NCBI RefSeq assembly: GCF_006345805.1
Contig: NC_042997.1
Span: 98,208,001 to 98,272,000, forward strand
DNA length: 64,000 nt
Reading direction: 5' to 3'
Source: Octopus sinensis
Taxonomy: Eukaryota
The translations under genes were made by a program, and so were the position numbers. This document shows, piece by piece, positions 4,686-64,000 of this stretch; position 1 is the first letter of the stretch; each line of letters opens with the position of its first letter. A model generated the notes under the pieces. That model was not told the DNA's origin and ran no database searches. It saw only the letters and a list, made by a program, of their open reading frames with translations.

Positions 4686-4696
4686 CACGTGTATAT

Positions 4697-12948: not shown

Positions 12949-15567
12949 ACAAACACACACATGAAATTGTACAATAATTATTTTGGTGCAAAGGTATGTG
13001 GCTTAGTGATTAGAAAGTAGGGTCACCATCATGAAGACCTAGATTTGATTCCTGAACAAAGCAGCATGTGGTTTCCTTGAGCAAGCTGCTTCATATCATG
13101 CTCCAGTTTGGACAGCTAAAATGAATATAACTTGAGTACGGTAGAAGCCCCCCTCCTCTGTCTCTAGCAATCACTTCCTCGATGTTCCGTTAGATCAACT
13201 GAATAAAGGCCAAAAGAGTGCCTATGTTTGTTAGCAACTACAAAAAGAGCCTACGAAAATTAGTTAAACATGCTACACATTACTAAGCCATACTCATCGG
13301 AAAGTGCTTTTATTTTATGAATGAACAAAATGCTAAAATGTTTGATGTAAAATGGTACTAAATATTATAAGCACCAGATTGATAGAAAAAATGGAAAATG
13401 ATACGGATCCGACGGTATGAATAGCAATCTGCTTGACGAGAGACCAAGTCACTGATTACACAATAGAACACCTCCCTATACCCATTCTCTAAAGTTTTAA
13501 TAATAATTTTTTTCTTGTGGCTTAGTCCCAGAAACAAAGGCCTACATAATTAATGAAAAAAAAAGGTAGAAAGGTCTAATTCGAAAGCTTGCAATAATGT
13601 GGACTCTGCTAAAGCCATGCCAAAATTATAGTCACCGCAAAATTTAGTTTCTGTAAATGTAATAGTAAATGTAATAGTTTTCTTTCCATAATATACCCAA
13701 TCAGTTAGTTTGCCTTGCAGGGCAGTTTAATCTCCATGTATAAATATTTATTTATTTTATACTCTTAAATCCAACATAACGAAGTGTCTCACCTCAATTT
13801 AAAATTTATAATGAGAAATAACATCATTAATCAAATCATGAATAAATAACTGCTAAGATTCTTAACGTAAACTGATATTTGATATTATAAACATCACTTT
13901 GAGACAGAGTAAGTACTGAAAGTACATTTCTGAAATATTTTGAAAATGTTTAGATATCTGAAAATTATAATTTATAAATGAGCTCAGTAAATCAAAACTT
14001 GTAATGAGTGAAGTATTTTCTTAAATTTGAAAGGGAAGCAAAATGTGATAGCAACTCAAATAAATAAACAAAAATAATCAATGATTGAAACGAAACATGG
14101 CTTCCAAGAAAACTTGTTCCATTATAAATGTTCAAAAATGTATAGTTATTGTTTAACGCCAAATCTATACTGCTTGAGCAAGATATGATCATATGCTATC
14201 TAATTATTTGTGAATTAGAGTACATTGTCCAAGGTATCGGTGGTGTTGAATTTGATTTTTCTATACGCTTAATGGACACCATTTAAGCTAACTCATTGTC
14301 CCCCAAAACAGTAGTAGCTGATGGTAGTGCACCAACATGGCCACAACTAACTGATAGGAACTACTAAAAGAGTTGATTGAAGCTTGGGAAATATTTTTTA
14401 AAGGTTGAAATCAATATCAGGCCACTGAACGTTTTGTGAGCAAAACAAAAGACTGCAAAGTAATTGCCGAAATTTATTAGAATAATAAGATGAGACACTA
14501 TAGGACAATATGATAAAAAATAAACTACGGTATTTCAAGCACCAGGATGCATGTGCCACAATGTTTAAAAAGTTCCTTTCTTAATCTATTGGTTCTGTGT
14601 TGAATGCCTCTTCACAGTACATTACAGAAGCATCTTCTACCAATGGCTGGTGAATGAAATTAAGCAGATGAAAATATTCAGATCATTTAATTAATCGATT
14701 TATTCTGTCAACATTACGAATTGACCCTTGATTGAATTTAGTGGGGTGAACCATACTGCAATTGTTCAGACAGAATTTCTTGTCGGGTGATAACCTCTTA
14801 TCTTGATATCATACTTCTTACTACAGTAATCGATTACTTTAGGTTTGTTTCTTCCATTTTAGTTGCCTTTTATATACAGAAAAAGCAACCGATTCTTGTC
14901 CCACTCGATGATGCCAGTCGACAGACTGATGCCTGACGGTCGCATCAAGTAGTCTCCTCGGCGGAAGCCTGAACTACAACGGGTTTGTCCCACAGAGAAT
15001 GTTTCCGGTTACTTTTGGGTACCCCATGTTTTTATATCTTCTATACATATAAATTTGACAAGGGCGATTCTTTCTTGTCTTGGGATTCACGGTCAAACGG
15101 CTGGGTGGAATTCCGCGAAAAATTACACAGATATGTTGAATGATCCGGTGGTGATGTTGGGCTTGTACTTTTTCATAGCTCCCATGGTTACCGAGATAAT
15201 CCATTATAATAATACTCTTGTGTTTATGAATGAGAAAGGAAGAGGTGAGCGTTTCAACTTAATATGAATATATGTGTGTGTATGTAAAAGAGGGGTATGT
15301 GAATGTGTGTGTGTGCGCGCGTGCGCGCAATGGAAGTGAGATGGTTCATCTTTGTTCGCTTAGTATTTGGGTTTATTTATTGATTTAGTCGAATCATGGT
15401 TGGGGTTTTTTTTGTTGGTCAGTTACTTTTAGCGTTTTGACAGAAAAAAAGTAATTCTAAAATTGTTTTTTAACTAAACGTGCACAAGCAAGTCGAATGC
15501 TTACGGAGGACAAGTTTCACAGCCACACCATCCAAACCGACTGGGTGAAACCGGGCTTAGCTGCTTG

Positions 15568-17256: not shown

Positions 17257-17343
17257 TGAGTGTATTCACACAAGGGGAACAGATGATACCCATCTTGAAA
17301 GCTTGCAAAGTACAATGTTCTGTTTTTGGAAATCATGATTTTG
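17257..17343 (+). CDS. 5'-nucleotidase-like gene, coding exon 2
   Basis: Pyrimidine tract and TTACAG acceptor at 17251-17256. Reads (L)SVFTQGEQMIPILKACKVQCSVFGNHDF, then phase-1 donor G|GTAAAT. In frame with exon 1; carries the GNHD motif. Not in the ORF track. Confidence 0.92.
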
Positions 17344-23600: not shown

Positions 23601-23613
23601 TATATATATATAT

Positions 23614-25197
23614 GCAGTTCCTCTTTCAGAGCTTCCTTGCAGCTGGCAAACTTCCAAGAAAACTGAAGGAAGGTAAAATATGCCCTATTCATAAAGGAGG
23701 TAGCAGAGCGGAGGCCAAGAACTACAGACCTATCTCTCTGACCTCACACATCAGCAAGGTCATGGAACGAATAGTCAGAAGGAAACTGATCACCTTCCTT
23801 GAAGAAAATGACTTGCTGCCCGACACCCAGCATGGTTTCCGACCAGGGAGAAGCTGCTTAACTCAGCTCCTACAACACTATGACTGGGTACTGAAACGAC
23901 TACTCAACCACTCAAATGTGGAAGTGATATATCTCGACTTTGCAAAGGCCTTTGATAAAGTCGATCATGGAATGATATGTCACAAACTGCGTGATCTCAA
24001 CATAGTTGGAAAACTGGGAGAATGGCTTCATGACTTTCTGAAAGATAGAAGTCAGGTGGTAGTAGCCAATGGGGCCACTTCCATTAACACGCAAATAGTG
24101 AGCGGTGTTCCGCAGGGCACTGTTTTGGGACCACTACTGTTCATAATGGCTCTCTCAGACATGCCCTCAGCACGCAGAGAACCACGATCACAAGTTATGC
24201 AGATGATACAAAAGTTTCACAGCAATACAGAACCCTGAGGACACTAAACGCCTGCAATGTGAGCTGGACAAAATATACAAGTGGGCTGAAAAGAATAGCA
24301 TGCAGTTCAATGCTGAAAAGTTTCAAGCTTTATACTATCAGCATGCAAAACTAATGCAATACCCATGAATACACTGGACCCGGAGGAATTGCAATCCCAG
24401 AGGCACAATCAGTGCGTGACCTGGGTATTTACATGAGTGATGACGCAACCTTTCGTGTACATGTTGCTAAATTGGCAATGAAATGTAGACGACTGGCCGG
24501 ATGGATTCTCAGAACCTTTAGAACAAGAAAACAAGAAACCATGATGGTCCTCTGGAGGACACTTGTCCTAAGCCACTTTGAATATTGCTCTCAGTTATGG
24601 TCACCATCCAGTGTCAAGTTGATCACAGAACTTGAGGCGATCCAACGTAGCTACACGAAGAAGATAGCCTCTGTGCAGAATATAATCTACTGGGAAAGAC
24701 TCAAGAGATTAAAACTATATTCCTTGGAGCGTAGGCGGGAAAGATATGCCATAATATACATCTAGAAGATCCTGGAGGGACTTGTCCCAAACTTTGGCAT
24801 CGAGAGTTACACAAATGCCAGAACTGGGCGCCACTGCGTGGTGCCTAGGACTCCAAATTTGCCATCAAGATGTAGGACAAGATACTGTGATAGCCTGGGC
24901 TTCCGAGGCCCACAGCTCTTCAATATCCTCCCGAAGAACCTAAGAGACCTGCATGGGGTGAATGCAGATGTCTTTAAAATGAAACTGGATCTCTTCCTGT
25001 CAGGTATCCCAGATGAACCAACTTCACGACAGGAGGTGCAGATGAGGGCAGCTGCATCGAACTCTCTCATGCACCAAATGGCAGTTGCTAAAAAGCTTTC
25101 GTGAAGTAAAACCATGTAGCAACACCAAATGGCGGTGCCCCAGCATGGCCACAGCTCATGAGCTGAAACTAGAATCAATCAATCAATCAATCAATCA
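23614..25197 (+). mobile_element. CR1-clade LINE, 5'-truncated RT region with intact 3' end
   Basis: NYRPISLTSHISKVMER, QHGFRPGRSCLTQLL, YLDFAKAFDKVDH, SGVPQGTVLGPLLF, RDLGIYM, EYCSQLWSP, LYSLERRRERY, with frameshifts. Ends in an (AATC)n tail. Confidence 0.93.
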
Positions 25198-37491: not shown

Positions 37492-37504
37492 AAATGTTGT
37501 TATG

Positions 37505-38013
37505 TGCTAAGTACCAGTGGTTGAACAGTGGAGTCGATGTAATCGACTAGCCCCCCTCACCCACCTGATATTGCCGACCTTGTACCAACATTTGAAACCA
37601 GTCGGCTAGAATAGGCTAAATTGCTCGTTTAATCGTGTTTATGTTAGTGGCAGCCCTATCAATTAGTATGTTAGTCCGTGATCTAACTTTAATGTGTACA
37701 TCGTACATTTAAGAGAAATAAATCATTCTGACGATATTTGTTAAATGGAACGAGATATATGCAAATGTACTTAAAAAATAACTAAGTGAAACAGTTGTAA
37801 ATTTTTAACTACAATTAAACTATCAGCCTTTGGGGCACGTCCTTGAATCCTTGAAGGGTTTAGTTGAATAAATCGCGGCCAGGACTTATTTTGAAGTAAG
37901 GTTCTTATTCTTGCGGTTGCTTTTGCCGTACCTCTGTTACAGAGATGTAACAGGCAAATAGAAAGTCCCACACACAGATATATTATATGTACATATATAT
38001 GTGCTTGTTGTGC

Positions 38014-38112
<99 letters not shown>

Positions 38113-38647
38113 ATGTTTGTGTGTGTGTGTGTGCGTGCGCACGTGTGTGAGTGTGAGTGTATGTAAATATATATCTGAACATAGATACGAGGTTGCGTCA
38201 TATTCTTTATCGAGGTTGACTCTCTTTTGCCGTCCCTTCCTTTTCCCTTTAATATATTGAGCCGTTCTTCAATGGGCTCTTACATCGACAATAAATCAGT
38301 ATTGATATACTACCATGGCTCCACCTGTCATACATCAGCGGCACATCAACGTAGGACGTGGCTGCATGAGTCACCGGAAAATCGTCATCCTTTCAACCTG
38401 TACTATCCTATTCAGCTGCTCTATGATTGTGAAAAACAATGTTGATGGCAAAATCACGCTGGGCAAAATGCCTCATTTTGTCCGTCCTTGCTTTCTAAGT
38501 ACAAATTTCGCCATGGTCGACTTTACCTTTCATCCTCTCTTGATCGATATGCTAAGTACCAGTGGTTGAACAGTGGAGTCGATGTAATCGACTAGCCCCC
38601 CTCACCCACCTGATATTGCCGACCTTGTACCAACATTTGAAACCAGT
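37505..38647 (+). repeat. Exact 98-bp direct repeat (37505-37602 / 38550-38647)
   Basis: TGCTAAGTACCAGTGGTTGAAC...CATTTGAAACCAGT is identical in both copies. Confidence 0.95.
38445..38647 (+). mobile_element. SINE family A copy
   Basis: GATGGCAAAATCACGCTGGGCAAAATGC...GTCGACTTTACCTTTCATCC...GTCGATGTAATCGAC...TTTGAAACC. Confidence 0.8.
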
Positions 38648-44238: not shown

Positions 44239-44239
<1 letters not shown>

Positions 44240-44278
<39 letters not shown>

Positions 44279-44366
44279 TATTATTATTATTCAGGTCACT
44301 GCCTGGAATTGAACTCGGAATCTTGGGGTTAGTAACCCGTGCTCTTAACCGCTACGCCATATGCGC
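44240..44366 (-). mobile_element. Second tRNA-only mini-SINE copy with (AAT)n tail
   Basis: Reverse complement of 44291-44366 closely matches 58135-58210. (ATT)n at 44240-44290 is its tail. Confidence 0.8.
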
Positions 44367-47264: not shown

Positions 47265-50200
47265 AAGTACCAAAACATGAAATGGGAAAAATAACTAACT
47301 CCTCATCTTCAACAACCCAAATATCACATTCCAACTGCTACCAACCAAAACTAACAACAACTGCATCAACACACCCATAAATCGACCCCAGATCCTTTCC
47401 CCTCCCATGTTCTGATTCCTCCGACATGTCGTTTGATGAAGGCGACACGGAGGAATGGCAAATGTCCACAGTGGGGAAGAAGAAAAAGGGGGAGAAAAAG
47501 AACAACCGCTCAATTGAACAAAGCTCTCCCGACAACAAAATCCCATGGATACCAACAACACCAGCACCAAAACACTACAAATATACAAGCACCAACAATG
47601 CTAACCGCAATCAACACGAACAATTTGGATCTGATGCAATACACCAGGTCGCTCACCACCATAAATGAATAAAGTTACAAAACAAACAACCATCCATGCA
47701 CAAGACCACCACAACACATTAAAATAATATACACCATACAAATCATACATAAACTAATAAAATCTTTCTAATGCAATAGGGAGATTTCGACAACATATGT
47801 CAAAAAATCTCTATAAAAATTTCCTCACGGAAACTGAGGAGGAAAATCCCCAGCATCCGAAACATTAAGTGTCTCTCTTTCTCTCTCTCTCACCTTCTGC
47901 TTTCGCTTTGTGTCTGAAACACAACTTCCGCCAGATTCATGCTTAAGATAGGTAATATAAATGTGCGTGGCTTGGGGTCGCCTTGAAAACAAAGTTACCT
48001 GTTAATCGACATCAAGTCACAAAATATGGATAGCATAGCCAGCGAAACTAGACTCTCCAACGTGCAGACACCTCAGCTCATGTTCGGCAAACAATTCAAT
48101 ATTCATTTTTTCCCGGTGTCTACCGAGAATGGGCGGTGGGGGTACTGCAGTACTTTTTCGAAAGAATCTGAACCTGATAGTACTGACAGTATTCCTAGAC
48201 CCGGAGGGCAGGCTGGTCGACTCGGCTGTCGATGGCTGTAATGGCTGTGCTTTCCAACTAGTAAAAGTTTACTCACCGTCCTTATCAGTTCCGCCGGATT
48301 TCTTTCGACGTCTAGAGGTTTCCTTGGGAACGTCTCGACCTTTACTTTTAGTGGGGGATTGGAGCGTCACCTTGGACACGCATTTAGACTATTTAGAGAT
48401 AGGAAAAGGAGGAGATGCAAATGCCTTATAGACATGTTCAAACGTTTCCAACTCTGACAGGTACCGATGTGGACATGTGGATATGGGCCAATGTGGACAT
48501 GGGCCAACCGCATTCAGTCGTCCAGATCGTATTTAGATAGAGTATTCTGTAGGATAGTGGATAGGATTAGTGTAGGTTGCCCATAATTTCACATAGTCAG
48601 CTATACAGATAAAAAAATCGTGACTTATCCGCTCAATTTGGATAAGAATCATAGGCAGGGTTCCGGTTACTAGAAGCCGGACGCATCTTTCCCAGAGCGA
48701 CAGGCTTACGAAGACCGGATTAGCACATTAGTTAAGAAGACGTTGACGGGGGCCATCGTCAGCAATAAATGAGGGATTTCCCAAAAGAGAGTAATCAAAG
48801 TAGAATCGGTTAAGTACATCAAGTCTTTAGCGATAGACCAAAATAGAATAGAAGGAGACTTAGTTAAGAAATTAGAAGAGGCACTTAGAAATGGCATCGC
48901 GTCCAGCATGCTGGCAGCAAGGTTGGCCCTTGATCAACACTTTAACGCCAACACGAAGGTTGTGTTGTCAGAGCTAGCATGCGTGCTTTGGGAAACGAAG
49001 GAATTGCAACTGCCCGAGCGGCCCTGGTGGTGAAGGCGCAACATGACAACAAAACTACCATTCGGTCTTTGATCGATGAGCAGGGGCGCGAATTGCTCGA
49101 GCCCGAAAGGGCATGTGAGGCCTTTCAGCAGCACTTTGCCCGACTGTGCGGGACGCAGAGTGGAATTTAGTGCCTACTTGCATGGCCTGCTACGACTCTC
49201 GGCAAGAGAGGTGGAGTTTTGTAAAAATCCCATCACAGCCGTGAATGTACGGAAGGCGATGTGGAAGAGACAAGTCGCCGGGCTTGGATGGTTTGTTCTA
49301 CGAGCTTTTTTGTCATATGCCAGGCTTGTTTGGAGAAGTCTTGGCAACAGTCTACTTGAACTAGCAGCAAAACAGGAGTATTTCCAGTTTTGTGAGCCGA
49401 GGAGCGGTGACACTGGTAAAGAAAGACCCAAACAAGGAGGGCGTTATAAACTTTTCCGACCCATCACTCTGCTCAACGCAGAGGAGCATCTCGAGCGAAT
49501 TGGGATGCAGGAGGAGAATGTCTGCATTTGTAGACGGTGTTACCGTCATAGTGTTGAGTCACAGGCATATCAACCTGGTTGGTGAGACACTAAAAGAATA
49601 TGTAGTGGTAACGGGAGCGAAAATTAACACGGAAAAAACAGTGGGCTTGCGGCTCGGTATCTGAAGAAACAAGCCCATGTCGTCCAACAGCGTCTCCGTC
49701 GTGGGACACTGGACCGACAGGCCGGTTAAATTGTTCGGGGTCTGGTTCAGTCCAGACCTCCAAATGAAGAAGAACTGGGACAAGATAACGAGTTAGGTGG
49801 CCACTCTCACCCAACAATGGGTCGAGAGAAAGCTATCTCTAAAAGGTCGGGCTGAATGCGTACATCGCATCCGTTAACTACTACTGTCTGACCGTCGTAC
49901 TTTGTTCCGACCCCAACGTCACAGGACTAGAACGAATACCCTTCCGCTTTTTATGGAAGGGAAGCGTTTCGATGGTCAGGCGATTCATTTGCTGCTAACA
50001 TACGCTAAATTGAGGGCTGGGCATGCCGTGGTTAATGATGCACAGACATTTCCAGCGTTTCGTAGACGACGGTGAACAGGAGCAGTCACCGTTTGTGAGA
50101 TGCGCTTTCCAGCAGCTCGTCTCTTTTATCGAACTGCAATCGTGGATCAAACCGAGACCGAGGCTGGGCGAATGGCACTGCGAGTGTCGCCATGCACTTG

Positions 50201-51150
50201 CATAACACTGCTGTCCGGGAACAAACTTGTGCGACTTCAAATCCACAAGGCGTTCTGTAGAGGATTAATGGAGGGAATGTGGGACGACGTTCATGAAGAA
50301 ACCCTGGGCGTCGGCGAGCAATACCTGGCCCGCCTCAAAAGGACCACTTTCGGGCCGGGACCCATGGACAATTTCCAGAGATCCCTGGCCTGACAGTGCT
50401 ATCGGGAAACATTGCTCGTTCGGGATAAGCTCTACAGACACGGTTCAATCGACTTGTCGGAGATGCGATCAGAGTAACGAAACTGTTCTGCACACACTCC
50501 TGCAATGTCCAAACATTTCAGACCTGTAGGCTTATGTTGAACGTCTTCAGTCACATGTGGGACGAATTCGGTTGTCGGCCGAGTTTATCGTGAATATTGC
50601 CACGCTACCTTCCTCTAATCGAGAAAGCAAGACAGTTTTCATTGTACTGGTGGCTATGGCGAAAGAATGTGTGTGGTGGAGTCGTACGAAAGGTTTAGAG
50701 ACAAACACTTTCCTCTCTGGCCAACAGCTCATCAACTTCTTCAAGTATCACTTAAAGAGGAAGGTGAGAATAGAGAGGGAAGTTTTGTCTAATGAAAGGG
50801 TCAATAAAGGGTGGGTGAATGCGGCAAGGATGGTACGACTAAATGACAGAACCACCTTTAACACGAACCTATAAAACAAATTGCTCTCATGTTAATGTTT
50901 TTGTTTTTCGTTTCCGAGGTTACCGTGGTTCTTTTTCTTTCCACAGATAAACCTAGTTAATGTGACATTTTCTTTCCCTGTTGGGAGCTCTTATCGTTAA
51001 CAACGACTTTCATGTTATTTCCCTGTTAACACGCCCCCACCCCAGGTTTTTATGTACCCTTTGATCGATTTCGAAAAAGAAAATTCTACATTGCATTGTC
51101 CCCTCCGTGTTCGGAGAGTAATTCCGCGAGGAGGAATTAATCTTCTCAAT
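46050..51150 (+). mobile_element. Tx1/L1-group LINE, near full span but decayed
   Basis: ORF1-like remnant with zinc knuckle (VEGRRPRSHLCGSKNHL, about 46600-46650). ORF2 from ATG 47939 (MLKIGNINVRGLG; SETRL; LVGDW; YLDRVF = APE endonuclease), RPITLLN, C-terminal CRRCDQSNETVLHTLLQC, stop 50874. Many stops and frameshifts; most of the RT core is missing between about 49490 and 49550. Whether ORF1 and ORF2 belong to one insertion is not certain. Confidence 0.85.
46924..47195 (+). mobile_element. 5'-truncated family-B-head SINE with a third tail, inside the Tx1 ORF1 region
   Basis: 46924-47070 aligns with 54460-54605, then diverges. Flanked by CAACAGC on both sides (possible TSD, but in a repeat context). 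Confidence 0.75.
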
Positions 51151-54425: not shown

Positions 54426-54720
54426 TGGAGGCGCAATGGCCCAGTGGTTAGGGCAGCGGACTCGCAGTCGTAGGATCGCGGTTTCGATTCCTAGTGTTGT
54501 GAGTGTTTATTGAGCGAAAACACCTAAAAAGCTCCACGAGGGTCCGGCAGGGGGGGGGGTGATCCCTGCTGTACTCTTTCACCACACTTTCTCTCACTCT
54601 TTCTTCTGTTGGCCTGCTCGCTTAGCCAGCGGGGTGGCGTCATTCGAAGGCTAAAACAATGCGAACGCATTGTGACCAGCGATGTGTAACAACATCTGAT
54701 GGTCTGGTCGGTCACGTGAT
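54426..54720 (+). mobile_element. tRNA-derived SINE family B
   Basis: A box TGGCCCAGTGG and B box GGTTTCGATTCC, body GCTCCACGAGG, tail ...CATTGTGACCAGCGATGTGTAACAACATCTGATGG. Ends 167 nt upstream of exon 3. Confidence 0.88.
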
Positions 54721-54887: not shown

Positions 54888-55027
54888 ATTTTGGTGTTGA
54901 TCGTCTTCTAGAGCTGTCTGAGAAATCAATGATTCCATGGTTGATGAGCAATGTAACAGACAATATAACTGAAAAACCTCTTGCAAATGGAGCCCTTTCA
55001 TATATGCTGGAATGGAATGGAAAGAAA
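54888..55027 (+). CDS. 5'-nucleotidase-like gene, coding exon 3
   Basis: ATTTTAG acceptor. Reads (D)FGVDRLLELSEKSMIPWLMSNVTDNITEKPLANGALSYMLEWNGKK and completes GNHDFDFG across the intron. PWLMSNV is typical of the family. Phase-0 donor AAA|GTGAGC. Confidence 0.92.
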
Positions 55028-55119
55028 GTGAGCCAAATTTCTTTCTCTTTATTTTCTTCACTTATTATTTCTTTATTCATGTTATAATAATAATGATAAT
55101 AATAATAATAATAATAATA

Positions 55120-55160
<41 letters not shown>

Positions 55161-55173
55161 CAACAACAACAAC

Positions 55174-55205
<32 letters not shown>

Positions 55206-55207
55206 TA

Positions 55208-56162
55208 ATGGCATATTCCTTAATGAGCAAAAAAGATATAAACGTGGGTGCTATGGTTGTAAAGATCAGCTTCTCATCAATAAAATTGTCATAAACAACA
55301 CAAAAACTTGTCGATAGCCTGGGTAGACTATAAAATTGCTTCTGATAGTCTACCACATAGCTGGATTAAGAAACGACGTACTGGAAACAAGCACAGAAAA
55401 AGCTAAGCGTATGAAAACCCGTACTAAAATTGCTGCCTTAGGTATTCTTAGTGATAAATGGCAAGAAAATCCTCTCAGTAGCAAATACCCAAAGAGAGCT
55501 AATAATGCCGATGTTGACAAAGCCCTTACCCATCAATGATTAGTGTTTTCTGGCTTAAAATCAGGAACAGAAGCAATTACCATTACCTCCCAAGATCAAC
55601 GTTTACCTACAAAGAGCTGCCATACCAACATATTAAAGAAAGTCCATATGTCATATATGTAAACAATAAAATGAAGCAATTGATCATGTTGTCTCTCTGT
55701 GCAGTCTTCTTACGCCTACAGAGTATCACCTTAGGTATGATAGAACAGCACAGTATATTCTCTGGGTAATTTGCAAAAACCTGGACCTGCCTCAGGATAA
55801 AAACTGATGGGAACACAAACCACCTTCAGTGCTTGAAAATGATCACATCTCACTCCTTTGAAACTTCACCGTTCAAACTGACAGAAAGATAGCTGCGAAT
55901 AGGCCATCCATTATATCGAAAGACTTGAGACAAAGATCATGCCCCCACATTCGTTTGTCTGTCCCAATCGACATAAATGTATCTGTCAAGACCTCCCAAA
56001 AAACAAGCAATTATAAAGAACTTGAAATGGAAATTGGCAAAATGTGGAACCTCAAGACTAAAATAATGCCTGTTGTCATAGGTGCCCCAGGAATGGTAAC
56101 AAAACGGGCTGATTCCTACCTAGCTCAGAAACCAGGAAACACCAAAATGGAAGAAATACAAA
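55208..56162 (+). mobile_element. R4/Dong-like REL LINE fragment (a)
   Basis: GCYGCKDQLLINK, KWQENPLSSKY, CCHC region, ANRP..., YKELEMEIGKMWNLKTKIMPVVIGA. Begins immediately after an (AAT)n tract. Confidence 0.85.
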
Positions 56163-56164
56163 AT

Positions 56165-58205
56165 AAAAATACAAAGCCAAAGATTTTATAAACCTCCCTG
56201 CAGCCAAGGAAATAATGAAACAACGAATACAACTGAAAGGTACGACAAAAGAACCAAATTTTATCGACAAATCAAGGTCTTCAAGACGGATGCAAAATAC
56301 TTTTACAGGAAAAGTGGCAAAGGGAAGATAGAGGTAAAGTAGCCACCTAAAACTGAGAAAATGGAAGAGTTCTGGAAGAAGATATGGAAAGACAAAAAAG
56401 AATGTAATGCTAAAGCTCGCAAGATAGAACGTGAGAATATGAGACCGGATGAAATTGAAGAGCAGAAATGGGAGGCGATAAGAGTAGAAGAGCTAAGATG
56501 TGTTCTTAGAAAGCCTTATAAATGGAAAACCCCAGGACTGGACCGGATCTCTAACTTCTGGCTGAAGTTTTTGACAGAAGTATACCAACATTTTGCTGCA
56601 TCCCTAACTCAGACCAAATACCTGCCAGCCTGACCGAAGGAACAACATACTTTCTACCAAAAACTGAAGACACGAAAAATTCAAAGAAGTACTGACCAAT
56701 AACTTGTCTTAACACTACTTACAAGATCATCACATCGATACTAACTGAAAGAATATATACTTTTCTTGAACAGAACTCTATCCTTCTACAAGCTCAAAAA
56801 GGTGGTAAAAGGAATTCTTATGGGTGCAAAGATCAATTCCTCATAAATATAATGATTGTAGAAAATTTTCGGAGCAAAAAAAAACAAAAACTTGAGTATG
56901 GCATGGTTAGACCACAGGAAAGCGTTTGATAGTGTCCCCCATAATTGGCTACTCAAGGCCCTTTAGATATATGCGATATAAATTCTTACACGGTAGCATG
57001 GCCAAGTGGAATACACGTTCCCTACACCATAGTAATGGGATGAGACAATCTAACGACATCAACACCAAACGAGGCATCTTTCAAAGTGAATCCATCACCC
57101 CATTACTTTTTTGCATGACACTGATCCCGCTCTCAGACGAACTGAGTAGCACCAGGTATGGGTTCAAAATGTATAATTTTATAGTAAATCATCTGCTTTA
57201 TATGGACGATCTTGAAGCTGTTAACAACTGTTAAAGAGTTCAACAAGGGCATCGGGATGAATTTTGGCCTTGATAAGTGAGCTACAACAAATTTTGTAAG
57301 AGGCAAGCTCGGGCAAACAACTTCCATTAAATTAGATACGGACACTACCATCAAGGAGATGGTATACAACGTGCTACTATGAAGGAAAAAATAATATAGG
57401 AGTATTGCAGGAGAGTAATACTCATACTAAAAACTGAACTGAAATCCCAAAATCGTATCGAAACCATTAACACCCTGGCACTTCCAGTAGTCCAGTACAG
57501 TTTTAACATCATTACCCGAAATCTTAAAGAGCTCCAACGCCTGGACAGGAAGACAAGAAAACTACTAACTTCTAAGAACCTGCACCACTCAAAAGCAGGC
57601 GCTGTTAGTCTGCACCTACTAGAAATAATGAGGGAAGAGGAATGAACAAGTACTTATCTATTACAGAAGACTGGATGCTGCGACTTGTGTGCAAACACGA
57701 AAGCAGCAAAAAATCACAGTTCATTGTCAAGGAAGCTTGCAAATTCGCAAGGAAAACCCTGAATTAGAGGAAGAACCTGAAACCACTGCCACCAGTCAAG
57801 CAAAACGGATCAAACAGACTTTAAAACAAAATTGAGGAGCGGTGGAGCCAGAAGGTTCTGCATGGACAGTATATACTTCGCAGCCGAAATGCTGATATAG
57901 ACCAAGCTACAACCCATCTGTGGCTGAGAAGCTCAGGACTGAAAGCTGAGTCTGACGGTTTCATATTAGCGGCACAAAACCAAAGCTTCCTTACCAAATA
58001 CTACCAGGCTAACGTTCTTCAAAACGGTTCTGACGCTAAATGCAGATTCTGCGATACACTTGACGAAACAATAGACCACCACATCTCGGGTTGTCTTGTG
58101 TTGATACCAAACGAATACAAAAATCGCCACGATAGGGCATATGGTGTAGTGGTTAAGAGCCCGGGCTACTAACCCCAAGATTCCGAGTTCGATTCCAGGC
58201 AGTGA

Positions 58206-58267
<62 letters not shown>

Positions 58268-58590
58268 GAGCGATCCAGGGTAATTGACCAGATATAATCA
58301 TTAAAGACATGGAAGAAAATACTTGTATACTAATAGATGTAAGTGTTCCCACTGATAATCATTATATCTGTAAAGGAATTTGACAAATTAAGGACTCGGA
58401 AATTGAAATACAAAAGATGTGGCCTCTTAAAGCAAGAACTGTTCCGGTTATTGTGGGTGCCCTAGGTATGATAAGAAAGAGATGTTAGAAGCATCTAGAT
58501 AATATCCCAGGAGAACCAAGTCTCAGAAATCAGAAATATAGTACTGACAAGTACCTTTCACATCCTTAGAAACAACCCTATCAATTTAAA
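56165..58590 (+). mobile_element. R4/Dong-like REL LINE fragment (b) with RT core
   Basis: KWKTPGLDRISNFWLK, YGCKDQ, AFDSVPH, GIFQSESITPLLF, HLLYMDDL, CRFCDTLDETIDHHISGC, PDIIIKD...LIDVSVP. Interrupted by a tRNA-like SINE at 58135. Confidence 0.9.
58135..58267 (+). mobile_element. tRNA-only mini-SINE with (AAT)n tail
   Basis: About 76 nt: GGGCATATGGTGTAGTGGTTAAGAGCCCGGGCTACTAACCCCAAGATTCCGAGTTCGATTCCAGGCAGTGACCTGA, with A and B boxes but no paired acceptor stem, followed by (AAT)n. Confidence 0.8.
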
Positions 58591-58738
58591 TGTATGTGTT
58601 GTATTACATGAAGATATTTCGCTACTGTCCCTGCTACTTGCCCTTTCATCAGTGAAACTGTAACATCTCTTATCTTTCACTCACCTTAAGATAATGGGTG
58701 TGTCTCGGCAAGTGATTGTAACATTCAGATTAAAAGTA

Positions 58739-58799
<61 letters not shown>

Positions 58800-58847
58800 T
58801 AATAATAATAATAATAATAATAATGATGATGATGACGATAATAATAA

Positions 58848-59058
58848 TAGCTTCAAATTTTGCCACAAGGGCAGCAGTTTTGGAGGAGAAGATGAGTTGA
58901 TGTAATCGACTCCAGTGTTCAACTGCAACTTATTTTATCGACACCGAAAGGATGAAAGCAAAGCCGACCTCGGCAGACTTTGAACTCGGAACGTAGTGAC
59001 GGGCGAAATGCCGCTAACCGTTTTGTCATGCTTGCTAGCTATTCTGTCAGCTGGCTAC
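58848..59058 (-). mobile_element. SINE family A copy inside an (AAT)n tract
   Basis: Reverse complement matches the family A head, core and tail. A 5'-half copy also lies at 59725-59820 (-) and degraded copies at about 7740-7880 (-) and 10830-10935 (-). Confidence 0.85.
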
Positions 59059-59107
59059 CATAATAATAATGATGATGATGATGATAATAATAATGATAAT
59101 AATAATA

Positions 59108-59573
59108 TGGTATAGGCACACGCCAGAAAAGGTCACAGAAAACGAGAAAGTACCATACTCTGGGATATGCTAATACACACAGAAAGAGATATTAAGGCCA
59201 ATAGGCCAGATATAGTTGTCAGAGATCATGAAGAAAAATGCTTTCTAATTGATGTATTAATACCAGCAGATGACAACGTTTCTCTAAAAGAAATGGAAAA
59301 ACTTTCAAATTACAAAGACCTGGAAATAGAAATAACACGAATGTGGAATCTAAAAATAGAGATAATTCGTATCATAGTAGGCACTTTAGGTATGATAACA
59401 AAATATTCAGACAAATACATAACAAAAACACCAGGACTTACAAATATATACAACATACAGAAAATTACACTTTCATTACAATAACCATAAGAGCATCACG
59501 GCAAATCACAGCACACACCCAAGGCACACAGAGCTGCGCTCGGTAGTGAAAGTACGTTATAAAAATAAAACTA

Positions 59574-59582
<9 letters not shown>
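59108..59582 (+). mobile_element. R4/Dong-like REL LINE 3' fragment (c)
   Basis: IKANRPDIVVRD...CFLIDVLIPADDN...YKDLEIEITRMW (REL endonuclease). 3' UTR ends ACTACTG(AAT)n. (AAT)n tracts on both sides. Confidence 0.9.
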
Positions 59583-59642
<60 letters not shown>

Positions 59643-59872
59643 CACCATTTCTATTACATGTACAAAGCTGAAAAGTCTGGTGAGAGTGGGACAATTTATT
59701 GGTCACAAAACAATTAAAGGCAACGTTGACCACAGTGTATCTTGAACTCAGAACGTAAAGCCGGACAAAATGCCTCTAAGCATTTTCTTCCGGCATGCTA
59801 ACGGTTCTGCTAGTTCACCACCCTAATGATAACAACAACAATTACTACTATAACAACGACGAAACGACGACG

Positions 59873-59907
<35 letters not shown>

Positions 59908-59949
59908 AATAATAATAATAATGATAATAATAATAATAATAATAATAAA

Positions 59950-60625
59950 GCTGATAGGTGGGAACAAAAACCTCTGCATGGCAAATATGAGGCCCGTAGT
60001 AAACAAGTTGATGTAGACCACAAGCACACCCATCAGTGGCTACGGAGCTTAGGGCTAAAGGCAGAGAGGGAAGGCTTTATCTTGGCTGCCAAAGATCAGA
60101 GCTTCTTGACCCGGGACTATCACGTCAGTGTAATGAAAAATGGTGTAGATCCAAAGTGCAGATACTGCAGCGATGGGATAGAAACAGTGGACCACCTAAT
60201 CTCTGGATGTAAGGTTTTAGCACCTGTAAAGTACAAATCAAGACATGACAGGGTTGGCCAATGTCTACATTGGATATTGTGTCGGTATTATAAAATCAAA
60301 ACTGCTGACAAAAGGTACAAGCACCACTCTGAGGCTGTAACTGAGGGAGAAATGTAACTATTCTTGGAGACTTCCCAGTATGTACAGACCAGACCATCAA
60401 AGCAAATAAAGCAGCTATTGTTGTGAAAGACCTAAACAATAAAGTCTGTTTATTGGCTGACATGAGCATATCCTGTGACCATAATATCTTGGCAAAAGAA
60501 TTTTAAAAGCTTAGAAAATAAAAAGATTTGCTGATCAAAATCGAAAAGATGTGGCATCTCAAAACGGTTACAATACCTGTCATTGTAGGATCAAAAAAAG
60601 AAACTGAAAATTATGTAAGAATGAC
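59950..60625 (+). mobile_element. R4/Dong-like REL LINE fragment (d)
   Basis: RWEQKPLHGKY, AAKDQS, PKCRYCSDGIETVDHLISGC...RHDRV, KANKAAI, MWHLKTVTIPVIVG. Follows an (AAC)n(AAT)n tract. Confidence 0.88.
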
Positions 60626-60629
60626 CCAT

Positions 60630-61030
60630 GAGGTGGAGTTCGTCGTAGATTTCCTGGAGATAGCATAAATTTGTGTGCTTCCACGTGTGCTGTTGATTTT
60701 GGCGGCAGGTACAACGTCTGAGTAAGCACTTTTGTCAAAATGTTTGACTCTAAGTTGAGTTACGGGCCTTTTTCAATGGGAGGACCAAAACGGCTCAGCC
60801 ATATATCCATCGAACAGTCACTTTTTCTGCTGCAATTGGCTTTTCGTTGCACACTGCACCTTCGGCCGAGTATCTGTCACCTCCCGTTAACATATTAGCA
60901 AAGTTTCACTGTGAAACTGAAAATCTTTGCATTAGTAACTCGTGCCCAGTGCTGTCCGCCAGAAATTGTAGTGTGGTTTTGCTTTTAATGTCTAATTCAT
61001 CCACTCGCAACTCACCGAACAGCTTTCGTG
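60630..61030 (-). mobile_element. Possible Tx1-like ORF2 scrap
   Basis: Weak similarity of the reverse complement to 50100-50290 of the Tx1 copy (TNLC motif). Confidence 0.35.
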
Positions 61031-61047
61031 TATTCGTGTTTCAGTAT

Positions 61048-61297
61048 GTGGAGGCGCGTGGCTTAGTGATTAGGGTGTTCGGCTCATCATTGTAAGGTTC
61101 TAGTTTCGTTTCCTAGAGCGGGTGATGCGTTGTATTCTTCAGTAAAATACTTCACTTCAAGTTGCTAAACTCTACTCAGCTGGGAAAAATGAGTAATCCT
61201 GCGATGGACCGGCGTCCGGCTAGGTGGGGATTATATACTCCATAAAACCTGGAAACCGGCCCTTATGAGTCGGTATGGCTCAAGAAGGTAACTTTAC
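61048..61297 (+). mobile_element. tRNA-derived SINE (head GTGGAGGCGCGTGGCTTAGTG)
   Basis: A/B-box-like head, CACTTCACTTCA...CTCAGCTG central block, tail shared with 4697-4995. A degraded relative lies at about 12990-13130. Confidence 0.75.
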
Positions 61298-61626
61298 TGC
61301 TTCAGTGCCTGAACAATTCATCTTCCACGTTTTGAGCTACTTAAATAGACAACGTGGAAGCACACAAATTTATGCTATCTCCAGGAAATCTACGACGAAC
61401 TCCACCTCATGGGTCATTCTTACATAATTTTCAGTTTCTTTTTTTGATCCTACAATGACAGGTATTGTAACCGTTTTGAGATGCCACATCTTTTCGATTT
61501 TGATCAGCAAATCTTTTTATTTTCTAAGCTTTTAAACTGTGCCTTTTCTGTTTGCTTCTTTTAAACTTTTGATTAGCTTTTATCATTTGTTATGATGAGG
61601 TAATAAATTTATTTTGTATGTTTTAG

Positions 61627-61752
61627 ATAGGTCTAATTGGACTTGTAGAAAAAGAATGGATTGCAACATTAGGCACACTTGATCCTGAAGATGTAACATT
61701 TCAAGACTTTGTGGCCGTTGGCTCAAAAATTGGAAAAGAATTGAAAGATGAC
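61627..61752 (+). CDS. 5'-nucleotidase-like gene, coding exon 4
   Basis: TTTTAG acceptor. Reads IGLIGLVEKEWIATLGTLDPEDVTFQDFVAVGSKIGKELKDD. Phase-0 donor GAC|GTGAGT. Confidence 0.92.
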
Positions 61753-61904
61753 GTGAGTAATAACTATCATATCCATCCATCCATCCATAAACGTACGCAC
61801 GGACACATACACACATACATACATACACACATACATACATACATACATACATACATACATACATACATACATACATACATACATACATACATGCATACAT
61901 ACAT

Positions 61905-62128
61905 ATTTTAGCAGGTGCTGCCTGAGTGATACCATACGGCATTCGAAGGCCGTCTGCACCGATCTCAGGCTTCTACCACCTTCATTTCTTCTTAGGTGAC
62001 ACCTGTCAACATCACTGTTTCTGTGGAAGTTCCCAGTTGTTGTCAGGATTTTGCGGGTTTTGATATCTATGGAGTGGGTTTCCTCTACAGACCAATCAAG
62101 TATCCCAAATGTTGGGATCAGCACTGGT
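61905..62128 (-). mobile_element. R4/Dong-like LINE fragment (e) in intron 4
   Basis: LIPTFGILDWSVEETHSIDIKTRKILTTTGNFHRNSDVDRCHLRRNEGGRSL. Confidence 0.85.
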
Positions 62129-62154
62129 ATTGCATATATTGTTTGTTAGTAAAC

Positions 62155-62720
62155 GCTTAAAGGAGAATCTGGATAAACTGTGATTTTCAGAAAGTGAGAT
62201 TGACCGGCTGATTCGTACATTACAAGTGCAATCTATAAGTAGAACAGTAAAAATATGCATGACTTTTCTCAAGTTCTGAATGTGAATTTGTCTGCTCCCA
62301 GAGATGGAGCATTGTATCTTTGTTGGAAACCGGCTCCCTCCTCAGTGGAAGATTTATTATAATTGAAAAAATAGAAGAGACATACATACATACGACTGCT
62401 CCAAGTTTCTATATCCAGACGATAAATTTACATTTATACCAATAATAACTAGTGTATTTGGTTTTGTGAGTAAATGTCTAAGTGATAATCTAGATAAGTT
62501 GGGATTAGAATTTTCAGGACAAAAAATAAAAAAAAATTTAAAAAATCAACCAACTAACTCGCCCATTACAAATATAATCTGTAAGTGGAACAGTAAAAGT
62601 ATGCAAGACTTTTCTCTAGTTTAAAATGTGACATTCTTTTTGTTATCTATGTTCCAAGGATGGAGGGCTGTATCTTTCTTACAAAACCAGCTCCTTCCTC
62701 AAAGGAAGAATTTTAATGAT
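62155..62720 (+). repeat. Old diverged tandem duplication in intron 4
   Basis: 62155-62365 is colinear with 62470-62720 (AATCTGGATAA/AATCTAGATAA; GTAGAACAGTAAAAATATGCA/GTGGAACAGTAAAAGTATGCA; GGATGGAG-like; CTCCCTCCTCA/CTCCTTCCTCA). Confidence 0.7.
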
Positions 62721-62777
62721 TAAGAACAAAAGAAATCATACGTAGATATGTATATACACACACACACACATACATAC

Positions 62778-62884
<107 letters not shown>

Positions 62885-62947
62885 ATATGCATATATGTGT
62901 ATTTGTGTACGTACATATGCTAACTCTTTCTTTTATTCATTTTGTAG

Positions 62948-63070
62948 GGTGCAGATATCGTCATTGCACTAACTCACATGCGGTGGCCAAATGATGAACG
63001 CCTCGCAGAAGAAGCAGAACATATCGACCTCATCCTGGGGGGTCATGATCATGATTATGGCCTTAAAGAG
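62948..63070 (+). CDS. 5'-nucleotidase-like gene, coding exon 5 (gene continues beyond window)
   Basis: TTTGTAG acceptor. Reads GADIVIALTHMRWPNDERLAEEAEHIDLILGGHDHDYGLKE, with the THM and GGHDH metal-ligand motifs. Donor GAG|GTATAT. The C-terminal nucleotidase domain is not in the window. Confidence 0.92.
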
Positions 63071-63383
63071 GTATATCCATGGAAGAAACAAATTCTTTAT
63101 TTTTATTTACAAACAAGGCGACGAGCTGGTAGAATTGTAATATTTAAGTTTGTGTGTATCAGTTTTCTACAATAGGTTGACTTGTTTTCATTTTTCACAT
63201 ACAGGACACTGCTTAATCACACATCATTTACTGTCCCCTACTCTTTATTTTTCGGCAACACCATCTATGTACAAATGTACTAATGTAAGCACGAGCACAC
63301 GTGCGCAAGCGCGCGCGCACTCATGCATACATACATGAATACATACATGCAGACAAACAAACAGACAGACATATAAACATATA

Positions 63384-64000
63384 AAAGGCAGACTGTATGA
63401 TGCATGTGTACGTACAGCCATGCTACATGATAGTGAAACATGGGCTATGACTGCTGACGATATGCGTAAGCTCGCAAGAAATGAAGCCAGTATGCTCCGA
63501 TGGATGTGTAATGTCAGTGTTCATAATCGACAGAGTGTAAGTACCTTGAGAGAAAAGTTGGACCTAAGAAGCATCAGTTGTGATGTGCAAGAGAGACGTT
63601 TGCGCTGGTATGGTCATGTGACGAGAATGGCTAAAGATAGTTGTGTGCAAAAGTGCCACACCCTAGCAGTTGAGGGAACATGTGGAAGAGGTAGACCCAG
63701 GAAAACCTGGGACGAAGTGGTGAAGCACGACCTTCGAACTTTAGGTCTCACCAAGGAAATGACTAGAGACCGAGACCTATGGAAGTATGCTGTGCGTGAG
63801 AAGACCCGGCAAGACTAGTGAGACCATAACCCGTGGCCAGTCGACTTATACATACCTTTCCTTCTTGGGACACAAAACTCCACTTGTGAAGACCCGTTGA
63901 GGCAAGTGAAAATCAAAATCAAAATCAAACCAAATCAAATCAGATATCAGAAAGCAGAACCAAAATCGAAGTCGATCAACATCAATGGAAATTGCAGCTG
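63384..64000 (+). mobile_element. RTE-clade LINE 3' fragment
   Basis: GRLYDACVRTAMLHDSETW...MLRWMC...RRLRWYGHVTRM...RGRPRKTW...RDRDLW, stop 63818, then 3' UTR running off the window. Confidence 0.9.

What the first reader, a model, noticed from the sequence alone, without database searches (positions are those of the whole stretch)
60502..61536. Perfect 185-bp inverted duplication forming a pre-mRNA stem 90 nt before the exon-4 acceptor
Seen: the arms 60502-60686 and 61352-61536 are exact reverse complements, although surrounding repeats are heavily diverged. The left arm spans the junction between an R4/Dong fragment and unrelated sequence, so it is not a transposon TIR pair; the right arm is a recent local inverted copy. 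In the host transcript it would form a 185-bp perfect dsRNA with a 665-nt loop, ending 90 nt from the 3' splice site. Established: long perfect intronic duplexes are ADAR substrates, and coleoid cephalopods edit RNA extensively. Inference: this could be a newly born editing or splicing regulatory structure for exon 4.
Basis: partly seen in the sequence, partly recalled or inferred. Interest (0 to 1): 0.7.

Follow-up and report, generated by a model that had tools for sequence, protein, structure and literature searches.

The report
Young inverted duplication in an intron
A 185-base piece of old retrotransposon DNA has been copied, perfectly and in reverse, about 0.7 kb downstream in the same intron of a 5'-nucleotidase-like gene. 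The transcript should therefore fold into a long RNA hairpin, but nothing here shows that the hairpin regulates the neighbouring exon.

Summary
Arms 60502-60686 and 61352-61536 are exact reverse complements: 185 nt, a 665-nt spacer, and the right arm ends 90 nt before an exon. It is the only perfect repeat in the window; other repeat pairs have a median identity of 74%.

The host gene is on the + strand and belongs to the 5'-nucleotidase/metallophosphoesterase family. I mapped five coding exons, and "exon 4" (61627-61752) is the fourth. Both arms lie in intron 3 (55028-61626).

The left arm is the tail of a decayed R4/Dong-like LINE copy (about 59950-60686). That copy is 82.6% identical to an Octopus sinensis copy and runs uninterrupted across the arm's outer edge. 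The right arm is an out-of-context fragment with no target-site duplication. It is therefore a local inverted copy, not a transposon terminal-repeat pair.

The predicted RNA fold contains all 185 arm pairs.

The regulatory reading has no support here. Exon 4 has no complementary partner and no unusual local structure. The nearest experimental analogue, inverted Alus in RABL5, loses its splicing effect at about this distance.

Most likely this is a very recent, neutral fold-back or template-switch duplication and a passive ADAR substrate. An assembly artefact could not be excluded with the tools available.

The parts
60502..60686 (+). Left arm, the source copy. It is the 3' part of the coding region of a decayed R4/Dong-like (restriction-like-endonuclease) LINE copy and carries two in-frame stops and a 12-nt deletion.
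   Evidence: Searches show the exact repeat. The tblastn of a neighbouring LINE ORF aligns 60378-60593 without a break at 60502. An O. sinensis copy aligns 59952-60632 at 82.6%. nhmmer extends the alignment to 60686.
61352..61536 (-). Right arm, an exact inverted copy of the left arm with no LINE context on either side.
   Evidence: LINE homology is confined to the arm (61406-61531; 61445-61531). The flanks show no significant LINE similarity.
60687..61351 (+). The 665-nt spacer, which would be the loop of the RNA hairpin. It consists of 354 nt of unclassified sequence, an old tRNA-like SINE copy, and a short LINE-like patch.
61041..61295 (+). Diverged SINE-like element with a tRNA-like head, inside the loop.
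   Evidence: Weak similarity (60-70%) to other copies in the window at 4694-4973, 12998-13127 and 54426-54494. There is no Rfam or ARAGORN tRNA call.
61306..61336 (+). LINE-like patch 'B'. It covers the same LINE positions as the end of the left arm plus 6 nt beyond, and contains a second copy of the 9-mer CTTCCACGT (61322-61330). The right arm begins 21 nt after that 9-mer.
   Evidence: TGCCTGAAC matches the O. sinensis copy 9/9 at the correct offset. The empirical chance of the 9-mer recurrence is 2.4e-4.
59950..60686 (+). The 5'-truncated, decayed R4/Dong-like LINE copy that contains the left arm. It starts directly after an (AAT)n array at 59905-59948.
   Evidence: (weak zf-RVT match).
61537..61626 (+). 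The 90-nt T-rich stretch between the right arm and the acceptor. The branch point and polypyrimidine tract are expected here, outside the duplex.
   Evidence: sequence; exon boundary.
61627..61752 (+). Coding exon 4 of the host 5'-nucleotidase/metallophosphoesterase-family gene (42 codons, phase 0).
   Evidence: Homologous exons match at 67-70% amino-acid identity with the same boundaries. Pfam Metallophos matches the joined exons 3-5. Homologues are named 5'-nucleotidase.
55028..61626 (+). Intron 3 (6,599 nt), which holds both arms.
   Evidence: Exon 3 is 54888-55027 with donor GT at 55028. The exon 4 acceptor is at 61625-61626.

Best explanation
This is a real and very young local inverted duplication. 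A 185-bp stretch at the 3' end of a decayed R4/Dong-like LINE copy in intron 3 was copied in reverse orientation into a site about 0.7 kb downstream. The likely cause is a DNA replication or repair error of the fold-back / template-switch kind, in which a 3' end copies the same-sense strand backwards. This mechanism is inferred, not shown.

Both arms lie in one intron on the transcribed strand, so the pre-mRNA is predicted to form a perfect 185-bp hairpin with a 665-nt loop. The expected fate of such a duplex is promiscuous A-to-I hyper-editing by ADAR, and possibly dicing, followed by removal with the intron. It is most likely selectively neutral and has no dedicated role in exon 4 splicing or recoding.
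For: Shown by the sequence. The repeat is exact with sharp edges. It is the only perfect repeat in the window, against a 74% median for the others. The left arm is collinear with a 694-bp alignment to an O. sinensis LINE copy that crosses the arm's outer edge, and with a protein-level alignment that crosses it in frame. The right arm carries the same two stop codons and the same 12-nt deletion, yet has no LINE sequence beyond its ends. It is therefore a copy of this locus and not an independent insertion. There is no TSD and no similarity in the flanks. The gene is on the + strand, and the exons either side are mapped. The fold contains all 185 pairs. With 0/185 differences, and all five CpGs per arm intact, the 95% upper bound on arm divergence is 1.6%.

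From the literature. Template switching creates perfect reverse-complement repeats in a single event (PMC8794818). Most hyper-editing across Metazoa lies in long, nearly perfect dsRNA formed by neighbouring inverted repeats, and O. bimaculoides has an exceptionally high density of such loci (PMC5625713).
Against: No independent assembly, read set or outgroup could be reached, so neither the existence of the second arm in the organism nor an empty-site allele is demonstrated. As the sequence stands, both junctions of the right arm have 0 nt of microhomology, which is not the classic signature of microhomology-mediated switching. A copied tract of 185 nt is long for short-range template-switch mutations. 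The second LINE-like patch with the shared 9-mer, just upstream of the right arm, shows that the local history is more complex than a single copy event. Expression, editing and the neutrality of the structure are all inferred.
Confidence: 0.6

Rival explanations
1. Assembly or library artefact. The second arm does not exist in the genome and was produced by a chimeric or fold-back read, or by a local mis-join or gap-fill.
For: Perfect identity in a region where everything else is diverged. No TSD and no junction microhomology. A second short near-perfect local duplication exists in the window: 37502-37602 and 38547-38647, 99% identical, with sharp edges. No independent sequence could be found to confirm the junctions.
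Against: The 64-kb window has no N and passes through many long microsatellites. This suggests a long-read assembly, in which a 1-kb structure would be spanned by single reads. Known fold-back read artefacts give spacer-less palindromes, usually at contig ends, rather than 185-bp arms around a unique 665-bp spacer (general knowledge, not tested here).
Confidence: 0.15
2. An older inverted repeat whose arms are kept identical by intrachromosomal gene conversion, so that perfect identity does not mean a recent origin.
For: Gene conversion between nearby inverted repeats is well known (general knowledge). Zero differences cannot distinguish youth from homogenisation.
Against: The arms are short and the edges are perfectly sharp, with no diverged homology beyond them on either side. 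This is what a single copy event would leave, and not a conversion tract inside longer diverged repeats.
Confidence: 0.1
3. A functional cis-element. The hairpin would modulate exon 4 inclusion by its position next to the branch point and 3' splice site. Alternatively it would recruit ADAR to the exon as an editing inducer element, or yield siRNAs.
For: It is a long, perfectly stable stem 90 nt from the acceptor. Inverted intronic Alus upstream of an exon can shift it from constitutive to alternative splicing (PMC2533698). Long stems can raise editing at nearby sites from either side (PMC5654063).
Against: Exon 4 has no complementary partner and no above-background structure. In RABL5 the effect faded once the element was about 90 nt or more from the exon. 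There are no Rfam miRNA or other RNA-family hits in 60502-61536. There is no evolutionary record of constraint, because the structure has not existed long enough to accumulate substitutions.
Confidence: 0.07
4. A DNA transposon, MITE or foldback element with 185-bp terminal inverted repeats, or two independent LINE insertions facing each other.
For: The overall shape is IR - 665 bp - IR, and TTAA lies near both outer ends.
Against: LINE homology and the reading frame run straight through the left outer edge. There is no direct-repeat TSD. No other copy of the arms or the loop occurs in the window. Both arms share private defects, namely two stops and a 12-nt deletion relative to relatives. Neighbouring copies of this LINE family end near (AAT)n arrays, and neither arm does.
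Confidence: 0.02

Closest known systems
Intronic inverted repeat pairs (for example inverted Alus) that form long dsRNA, are hyper-edited by ADAR and sometimes affect splicing of the adjacent exon (PMC2533698; PMC5625713)
   Same: Two reverse-complementary copies lie within 2 kb in one intron and upstream of an exon, and a long near-perfect intramolecular duplex is predicted. This class is reported as especially abundant in octopus.
   Different: The arms are not two independent insertions of a repeat family. They are one locus copied onto itself, so the duplex is 100% paired. Editing and any splicing effect are untested, and the 90-nt distance to the exon is at the limit where the RABL5 effect vanished.
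Template-switch mutations and fold-back (snap-back) inverted duplications that create perfect hairpins in one step (PMC8794818; PMC10710096)
   Same: It is a reverse-complement copy of nearby sequence, the source remains in its native context, and a perfect stem appears at once.
   Different: The copied tract (185 nt) and the present spacer (665 nt) are much larger than the short events described for RNA genes and miRNAs. No microhomology is visible at the two junctions, and no ancestral state is available.
Editing inducer elements, long intronic stems that recruit ADAR to a nearby short duplex (PMC3479170; PMC5654063)
   Same: It is a long stable intronic stem within about 100-200 nt of an exon.
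   Different: Known EIEs are conserved and act on an adjacent short duplex that contains the edited site. Here no such duplex involves exon 4, and the stem is too new to be conserved.
hpRNA / endo-siRNA hairpin loci of Drosophila (from general knowledge)
   Same: It is a long, perfect inverted-repeat hairpin transcribed by Pol II.
   Different: It is intronic and derived from a dead LINE fragment, and there are no small-RNA data. Its arms are only about 80% identical to the two related LINE copies compared, so trans-silencing by perfect siRNAs is unlikely.

Membership tests
Intronic inverted-repeat dsRNA (ADAR hyper-editing substrate class) | Reverse-complementary copy with >95% identity over at least 40 bp within 2 kb (criterion of PMC5625713) | tested here: met
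   185 bp at 100% identity, 665 nt apart.
Intronic inverted-repeat dsRNA (ADAR hyper-editing substrate class) | Both arms lie in the same primary transcript | tested here: met
   Both arms lie in intron 3 of a + strand gene whose exons 3 and 4 flank them. Actual transcription was not tested.
Intronic inverted-repeat dsRNA (ADAR hyper-editing substrate class) | Clustered A-to-G mismatches in RNA reads over the arms | not testable with these tools
   No RNA-seq data are reachable.
Intronic inverted-repeat dsRNA (ADAR hyper-editing substrate class) | Arms are two separate insertions of an interspersed repeat | tested here: not met
   The right arm is an exact copy of this locus, including its private stops and deletion, and lacks LINE context.
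Template-switch / fold-back inverted duplication | The copy is the reverse complement of nearby sequence, with the source in its native context and the copy out of context | tested here: met
Template-switch / fold-back inverted duplication | Microhomology at the switch points | tested here: inconclusive
   There is 0 nt of microhomology at 61351/61352 and at 61536/61537 as they stand. However, a 9-mer identical to the last 9 nt of the left arm lies 21 nt upstream of the right arm (chance 2.4e-4), inside a second LINE-like patch.
Template-switch / fold-back inverted duplication | An ancestral or allelic state lacking the copy | not testable with these tools
   No orthologous or allelic sequence was found.
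TIR DNA transposon / MITE / foldback element | Target-site duplication flanking the inverted termini | tested here: not met
   The flanks are ...AAAGAAT and CTGTGCC..., with no direct repeat.
TIR DNA transposon / MITE / foldback element | The termini interrupt the host sequence | tested here: not met
   LINE DNA and the protein frame continue across 60501/60502.
TIR DNA transposon / MITE / foldback element | Multiple copies of the unit | tested here: inconclusive
   There is none in the 64-kb window, and the genome could not be searched.
Editing inducer element (EIE) | A long stable stem close to the target | tested here: met
   185 bp, -327 kcal/mol, 90 nt from the exon.
Editing inducer element (EIE) | An adjacent shorter duplex that contains the edited exonic site | tested here: not met
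   The exon 4 region folds no better than shuffles (z = +0.55). The best inverted match to the exon in 55028-64000 is 10 nt, and duplex energies fall within the shuffled-exon range.
Editing inducer element (EIE) | Evolutionary conservation of the stem | not testable with these tools
   No orthologous locus is available, and zero divergence implies a very recent origin.
R4/Dong-like (restriction-like-endonuclease) non-LTR retrotransposon, as the source of the arm sequence | C-terminal CCHC motif followed by an RPD...D...K nuclease-like region downstream of the RT | tested here: met
   C-x2-C...H-x4-C and the (R/K)PDI...ID motifs align with relatives, with a weak Pfam zf-RVT match. The clade name itself rests on my knowledge of these motifs.
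R4/Dong-like (restriction-like-endonuclease) non-LTR retrotransposon, as the source of the arm sequence | Association with microsatellite targets | tested here: met
   Copies in this intron and the O. sinensis copy abut (AAT)n arrays. RLE-bearing clades target microsatellites (PMC4640811).

The most novel reading that the evidence does not exclude
The hairpin is a just-born, possibly still polymorphic structure that already has a measurable molecular phenotype in a cephalopod. It would be heavily edited, and it would change exon 4 inclusion, recruit ADAR to the transcript, or feed an siRNA pathway. That would make it a natural with/without experiment on how template switching creates regulatory dsRNA. 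A related reading is that it began as a near-perfect palindrome with a 21-nt spacer and was then stabilised by a roughly 635-bp insertion at its centre.
Probability: 0.07. Interest if true: 0.55.

Novelty: new member of a known kind. Interest (0 to 1): 0.2.

Why it matters
If real, it is a clean and datable example of a long perfect RNA hairpin created in one step from dead transposon sequence inside a gene. If it is polymorphic, alleles with and without the arm would allow a direct test of what a new 185-bp intronic duplex does to editing, splicing and small-RNA production in a lineage with very active ADARs. On present evidence it is one more intronic inverted repeat of a common class, with no sign of function. 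If it is an artefact, it marks a local assembly error next to an exon.

Tried and rejected
1. Independent confirmation of the junctions. I looked up by exact protein sequence the two ORFs that cross the inner junctions and two larger neighbouring ORFs. None is on record. The exon 4 peptide found only 70%-identical homologues in metagenome contigs and no orthologue. The one metagenome DNA scan, with a 22-mer from the right flank, returned a chance match in an unrelated contig.

2. TIR transposon. Rejected because there is no TSD and LINE continuity runs across the arm edge.

3. Two independent LINE insertions whose 3' ends face each other. Rejected because both arms share private stops and a 12-nt deletion. 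In addition, the related O. sinensis copy continues about 230-290 nt further before reaching its (AAT)n-rich region, and that stretch is absent here.

4. Gene conversion between two old diverged copies. Rejected because there is no residual similarity beyond either edge.

5. L1-style twin priming. Rejected because there is no TSD, no tail, and the duplicated tract is flanking-type sequence.

6. The 9-mer CTTCCACGT as a simple target-site duplication of the 635 bp between its two copies. Not accepted. The sequence upstream of the second copy is itself LINE-like (TGCCTGAAC, 9/9), so the recurrence is at least partly homology between two LINE-derived patches. nhmmer scores of conceptual 'insertion-removed' constructs rose by only 6-11 bits, and control constructs rose similarly.

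7. A known RNA family in the arms or loop. None was found, and the mir-297-like hits nearby are (ACAT)n and (AT)n microsatellites. No tRNA was called.

8. An editing-complementary sequence or local structure for exon 4. None was found.

9. Using the published octopus density of near-perfect inverted repeats to argue that one per 64 kb is expected. Only partly usable, because in this window 19 of 25 qualifying tiles are microsatellites.

Full report
**Observation**

The two arms, 60502-60686 and 61352-61536, are exact reverse complements of 185 nt separated by 665 nt. The match stops abruptly at all four edges. Sixty bases outside the arms, and sixty inside, show no similarity in the inverted sense. 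In a self-comparison of the whole 64-kb window this is the only 100% pair. The remaining 38 pairs of at least 60 bp have a median identity of 74%, and only three exceed 90%. The window has no N.

I also applied the criterion Porath et al. used to measure dsRNA potential: >95% identity, at least 40 bp, reverse-oriented, within 2 kb (PMC5625713). Twenty-five of 1199 tiles qualify. Nineteen are (AT)n or (ATT)n microsatellites, and the six complex-sequence tiles all belong to this repeat.

**Host gene and position**

The exon downstream of the repeat translates to IGLIGLVEKEW...KELKDD. It matches ORFs in metagenome-borne eukaryotic contigs at about 70% identity with the same exon boundaries, and those contigs carry a 5_nucleotid_C domain further downstream. 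Using these and other homologues I mapped five contiguous coding exons on the + strand:

| Exon | Coordinates | Note |
|---|---|---|
| e1 | 12627-12792 | starts with ATG |
| e2 | 17257-17343 | |
| e3 | 54888-55027 | |
| e5 | 62948-63069 | |

The joined exons 3-5 match Pfam Metallophos, and their homologues are named 5'-nucleotidase or calcineurin-like phosphoesterase. Both arms lie in intron 3 (55028-61626, 6,599 nt), on the transcribed strand, and the right arm ends 90 nt before the exon. An RNA fold of 60451-61640 contains all 185 arm-arm pairs, and the duplex alone is worth -327 kcal/mol.

**What the arms are made of**

Intron 3 holds four same-orientation C-terminal fragments of a non-LTR retrotransposon. 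They carry a CCHC motif and an RPD...D...K nuclease-like region. They lie at 55871-56161, 58267-58530, 59167-59481 and 60378-60593 by tblastn, interspersed with (AAT)n arrays. This is the pattern expected of microsatellite-targeting, restriction-like-endonuclease elements of the R4/Dong type (PMC4640811). The clade name rests on my knowledge of the motifs.

A conceptual translation of the copy that contains the left arm finds relatives at up to 70% identity, including an Octopus sinensis protein. The O. sinensis genomic copy aligns to window 59952-60632 at 82.6% over 694 bp, beginning right after the (AAT)n array at 59905-59948. This alignment, and the protein frame, run straight through the outer edge of the left arm at 60501/60502. 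The arm contains two in-frame stop codons and a 12-nt deletion relative to its relatives.

The right arm carries exactly the same defects, but LINE homology there is confined to the arm. Nothing beyond 61536, or before 61352 in the inverted sense, is LINE-like. The left arm is therefore the resident sequence and the right arm is a copy of this very locus. It is neither an independent insertion nor a transposon terminus. No target-site duplication flanks the 1,035-bp unit.

Strong homology to the O. sinensis copy stops at 60632. However, nhmmer continues the alignment, ungapped and in register, to exactly 60686. By my count from the alignments, 27 of 53 positions are identical, the stop codon falls at the same position, and the CACGT is shared. 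The arm may thus be LINE-derived throughout, with the LINE/non-LINE boundary coinciding with the arm's inner edge rather than lying inside the arm.

**The loop, and an unexplained detail**

The loop consists of three parts:
- 354 nt of unclassified sequence;
- an old tRNA-like SINE copy (about 61041-61295), only 60-70% similar to other copies in the window;
- a 31-nt patch (61306-61336, + strand) that resembles the same LINE positions as the end of the left arm, plus 6 nt beyond.

In that patch, TGCCTGAAC matches the O. sinensis copy 9/9 at the correct offset, followed by ...CACGT.TTGAG. The patch contains the 9-mer CTTCCACGT, identical to the last 9 nt of the left arm, and the right arm begins 21 nt after it. 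The 9-mer occurs only three times on the + strand of the window. The empirical chance of such a recurrence next to the partner junction is 2.4e-4.

About 28 nt of LINE sequence is thus represented twice in direct orientation, flanking 620-635 nt of the loop. If that block were absent, the arms would be only 21 nt apart. One coherent reading is a fold-back duplication with a short spacer, followed by an insertion at the fragile centre. The alternative is a copy made across a pre-existing insertion. Conceptual constructs that remove the block and the right arm raised nhmmer scores by only 6-11 bits, and control constructs did nearly as well. I therefore treat this as unresolved.

**Mechanism of origin (inferred)**

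The features are a discrete, exact, reverse-complement copy of nearby sequence, with the source in context and the copy out of context. This is the signature of template switching or fold-back synthesis during replication or break repair, a process documented to create perfect stems in one step (PMC8794818; PMC10710096). Two points count against a textbook case: the two junctions show no microhomology as they stand, and the tract is long. With 0/185 differences, and all five CpGs per arm intact, the 95% upper bound on arm-to-arm divergence is 1.6%. Either the event is recent or the arms are homogenised by gene conversion. The sharp edges favour a recent event.

**Likely consequence**

A perfect 185-bp intramolecular duplex in a pre-mRNA is a preferred ADAR substrate. 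Across Metazoa, most hyper-editing lies in long, nearly perfect dsRNA formed by neighbouring inverted repeats, and O. bimaculoides shows one of the two strongest hyper-editing signals together with an exceptionally high density of such loci (PMC5625713). Passive hyper-editing of the arms is therefore the default expectation, if the gene is expressed and if the organism is an octopod. The 82.6% LINE match is consistent with an octopod origin but does not prove it.

**The regulatory hypothesis**

Exon 4 lies outside the duplex.

*Recoding or an editing-inducer effect.* This would require the exon to sit in a shorter duplex of its own (PMC5654063). The exon with its flanks folds no better than shuffled sequence (z = +0.55). 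Its best inverted match anywhere in 55028-64000 is 10 nt, and its best duplex energies fall inside the range of shuffled exons.

*Splicing.* The closest experimental precedent is the RABL5 inverted-Alu pair. There the element lay 24 nt from the exon, and the effect was lost once 68 nt or more were inserted, which gives about 90 nt or more (PMC2533698). Here the distance is 90 nt, and the branch-point/polypyrimidine region is unpaired. No known RNA family matches the arms or loop.

A function is not excluded, but nothing supports it, and a structure this young carries no record of selection.

**Artefact**

I could not reach any independent sequence of this locus, so an assembly or library artefact remains possible. 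The gap-free passage through many long microsatellites suggests long-read data, in which a 1-kb structure is normally spanned by single reads. I put the artefact at about 15%.

**Verdict**

The finding is a correct observation of a real and unusual-looking sequence feature. Its kind is ordinary: an intronic inverted repeat born by local inverted duplication of dead transposon DNA. It is a new member of a known class. Its interest is modest, and would rise if the structure proves polymorphic and has a measurable effect on the transcript.

Noticed in passing
window 60678-60686, 61306-61336 (9-mer at 61322-61330), 61352-61360: A short second LINE-like patch sits just upstream of the right arm. 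It repeats the last 9 nt of the left arm (CTTCCACGT) in direct orientation, and it forms a 9-bp mini-hairpin with the first 9 nt of the right arm across a 21-nt loop. About 28 nt of LINE sequence is thus present twice, flanking 620-635 nt of the loop. The order of events is unresolved.
   Followed up: partly
window 55871-56161, 58267-58530, 59167-59481, 59950-60686; (AAT)n at 58210-58267, 58739-58849, 59060-59107, 59577-59642, 59905-59948: Intron 3 contains four same-orientation 3' fragments of R4/Dong-like LINEs interleaved with (AAT)n arrays, as expected for repeated insertion into a TAA-type microsatellite. The copy at 59167-59484 still has an open 105-aa C-terminal ORF.
   Followed up: partly
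window 37502-37602 and 38547-38647: A second short local duplication with sharp edges: 101 bp, 99% identical, direct orientation, about 1 kb apart. A third copy of the same repeat family in the window is only 78% identical. It may be the same kind of recent local copying, or a recurrent assembly quirk.
   Followed up: partly
window 44239-44364 and 58137-58261: A 95%-identical inverted pair 14 kb apart, made of an (ATT)n array plus a tRNA-like SINE end. These appear to be young copies of a SINE family.
   Followed up: no
window 12627-63069: The host gene is a 5'-nucleotidase/metallophosphoesterase-family gene with an ATG at 12627. Five coding exons lie in the window, and intron 2 is 37.5 kb (17344-54887). 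No orthologue closer than about 60% identity appeared in the protein collection.
   Followed up: yes
window 61805-61905, 62737-62919, 63242-63366: The sub-threshold Rfam hits to mir-297, mir-1277, mir-3149 and MIR1222 all fall on (ACAT)n, (AT)n or (CATA)n microsatellites and are low-complexity artefacts. One of these arrays begins 53 nt after the exon 4 donor.
   Followed up: yes
window 23612-24765, 48129-50874, 56361-57234, 61723-62124 (-), 63420-63818: Further reverse-transcriptase-like ORF fragments from other retroelements are scattered through the introns on both strands.
   Followed up: no
L009 (SDBV01000020.1) 6311-6340: An exact 22-mer from the right flank of the repeat occurs in an unrelated 145-kb contig of the metagenome collection. 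Only 30 bp align, so it is a chance match.
   Followed up: yes
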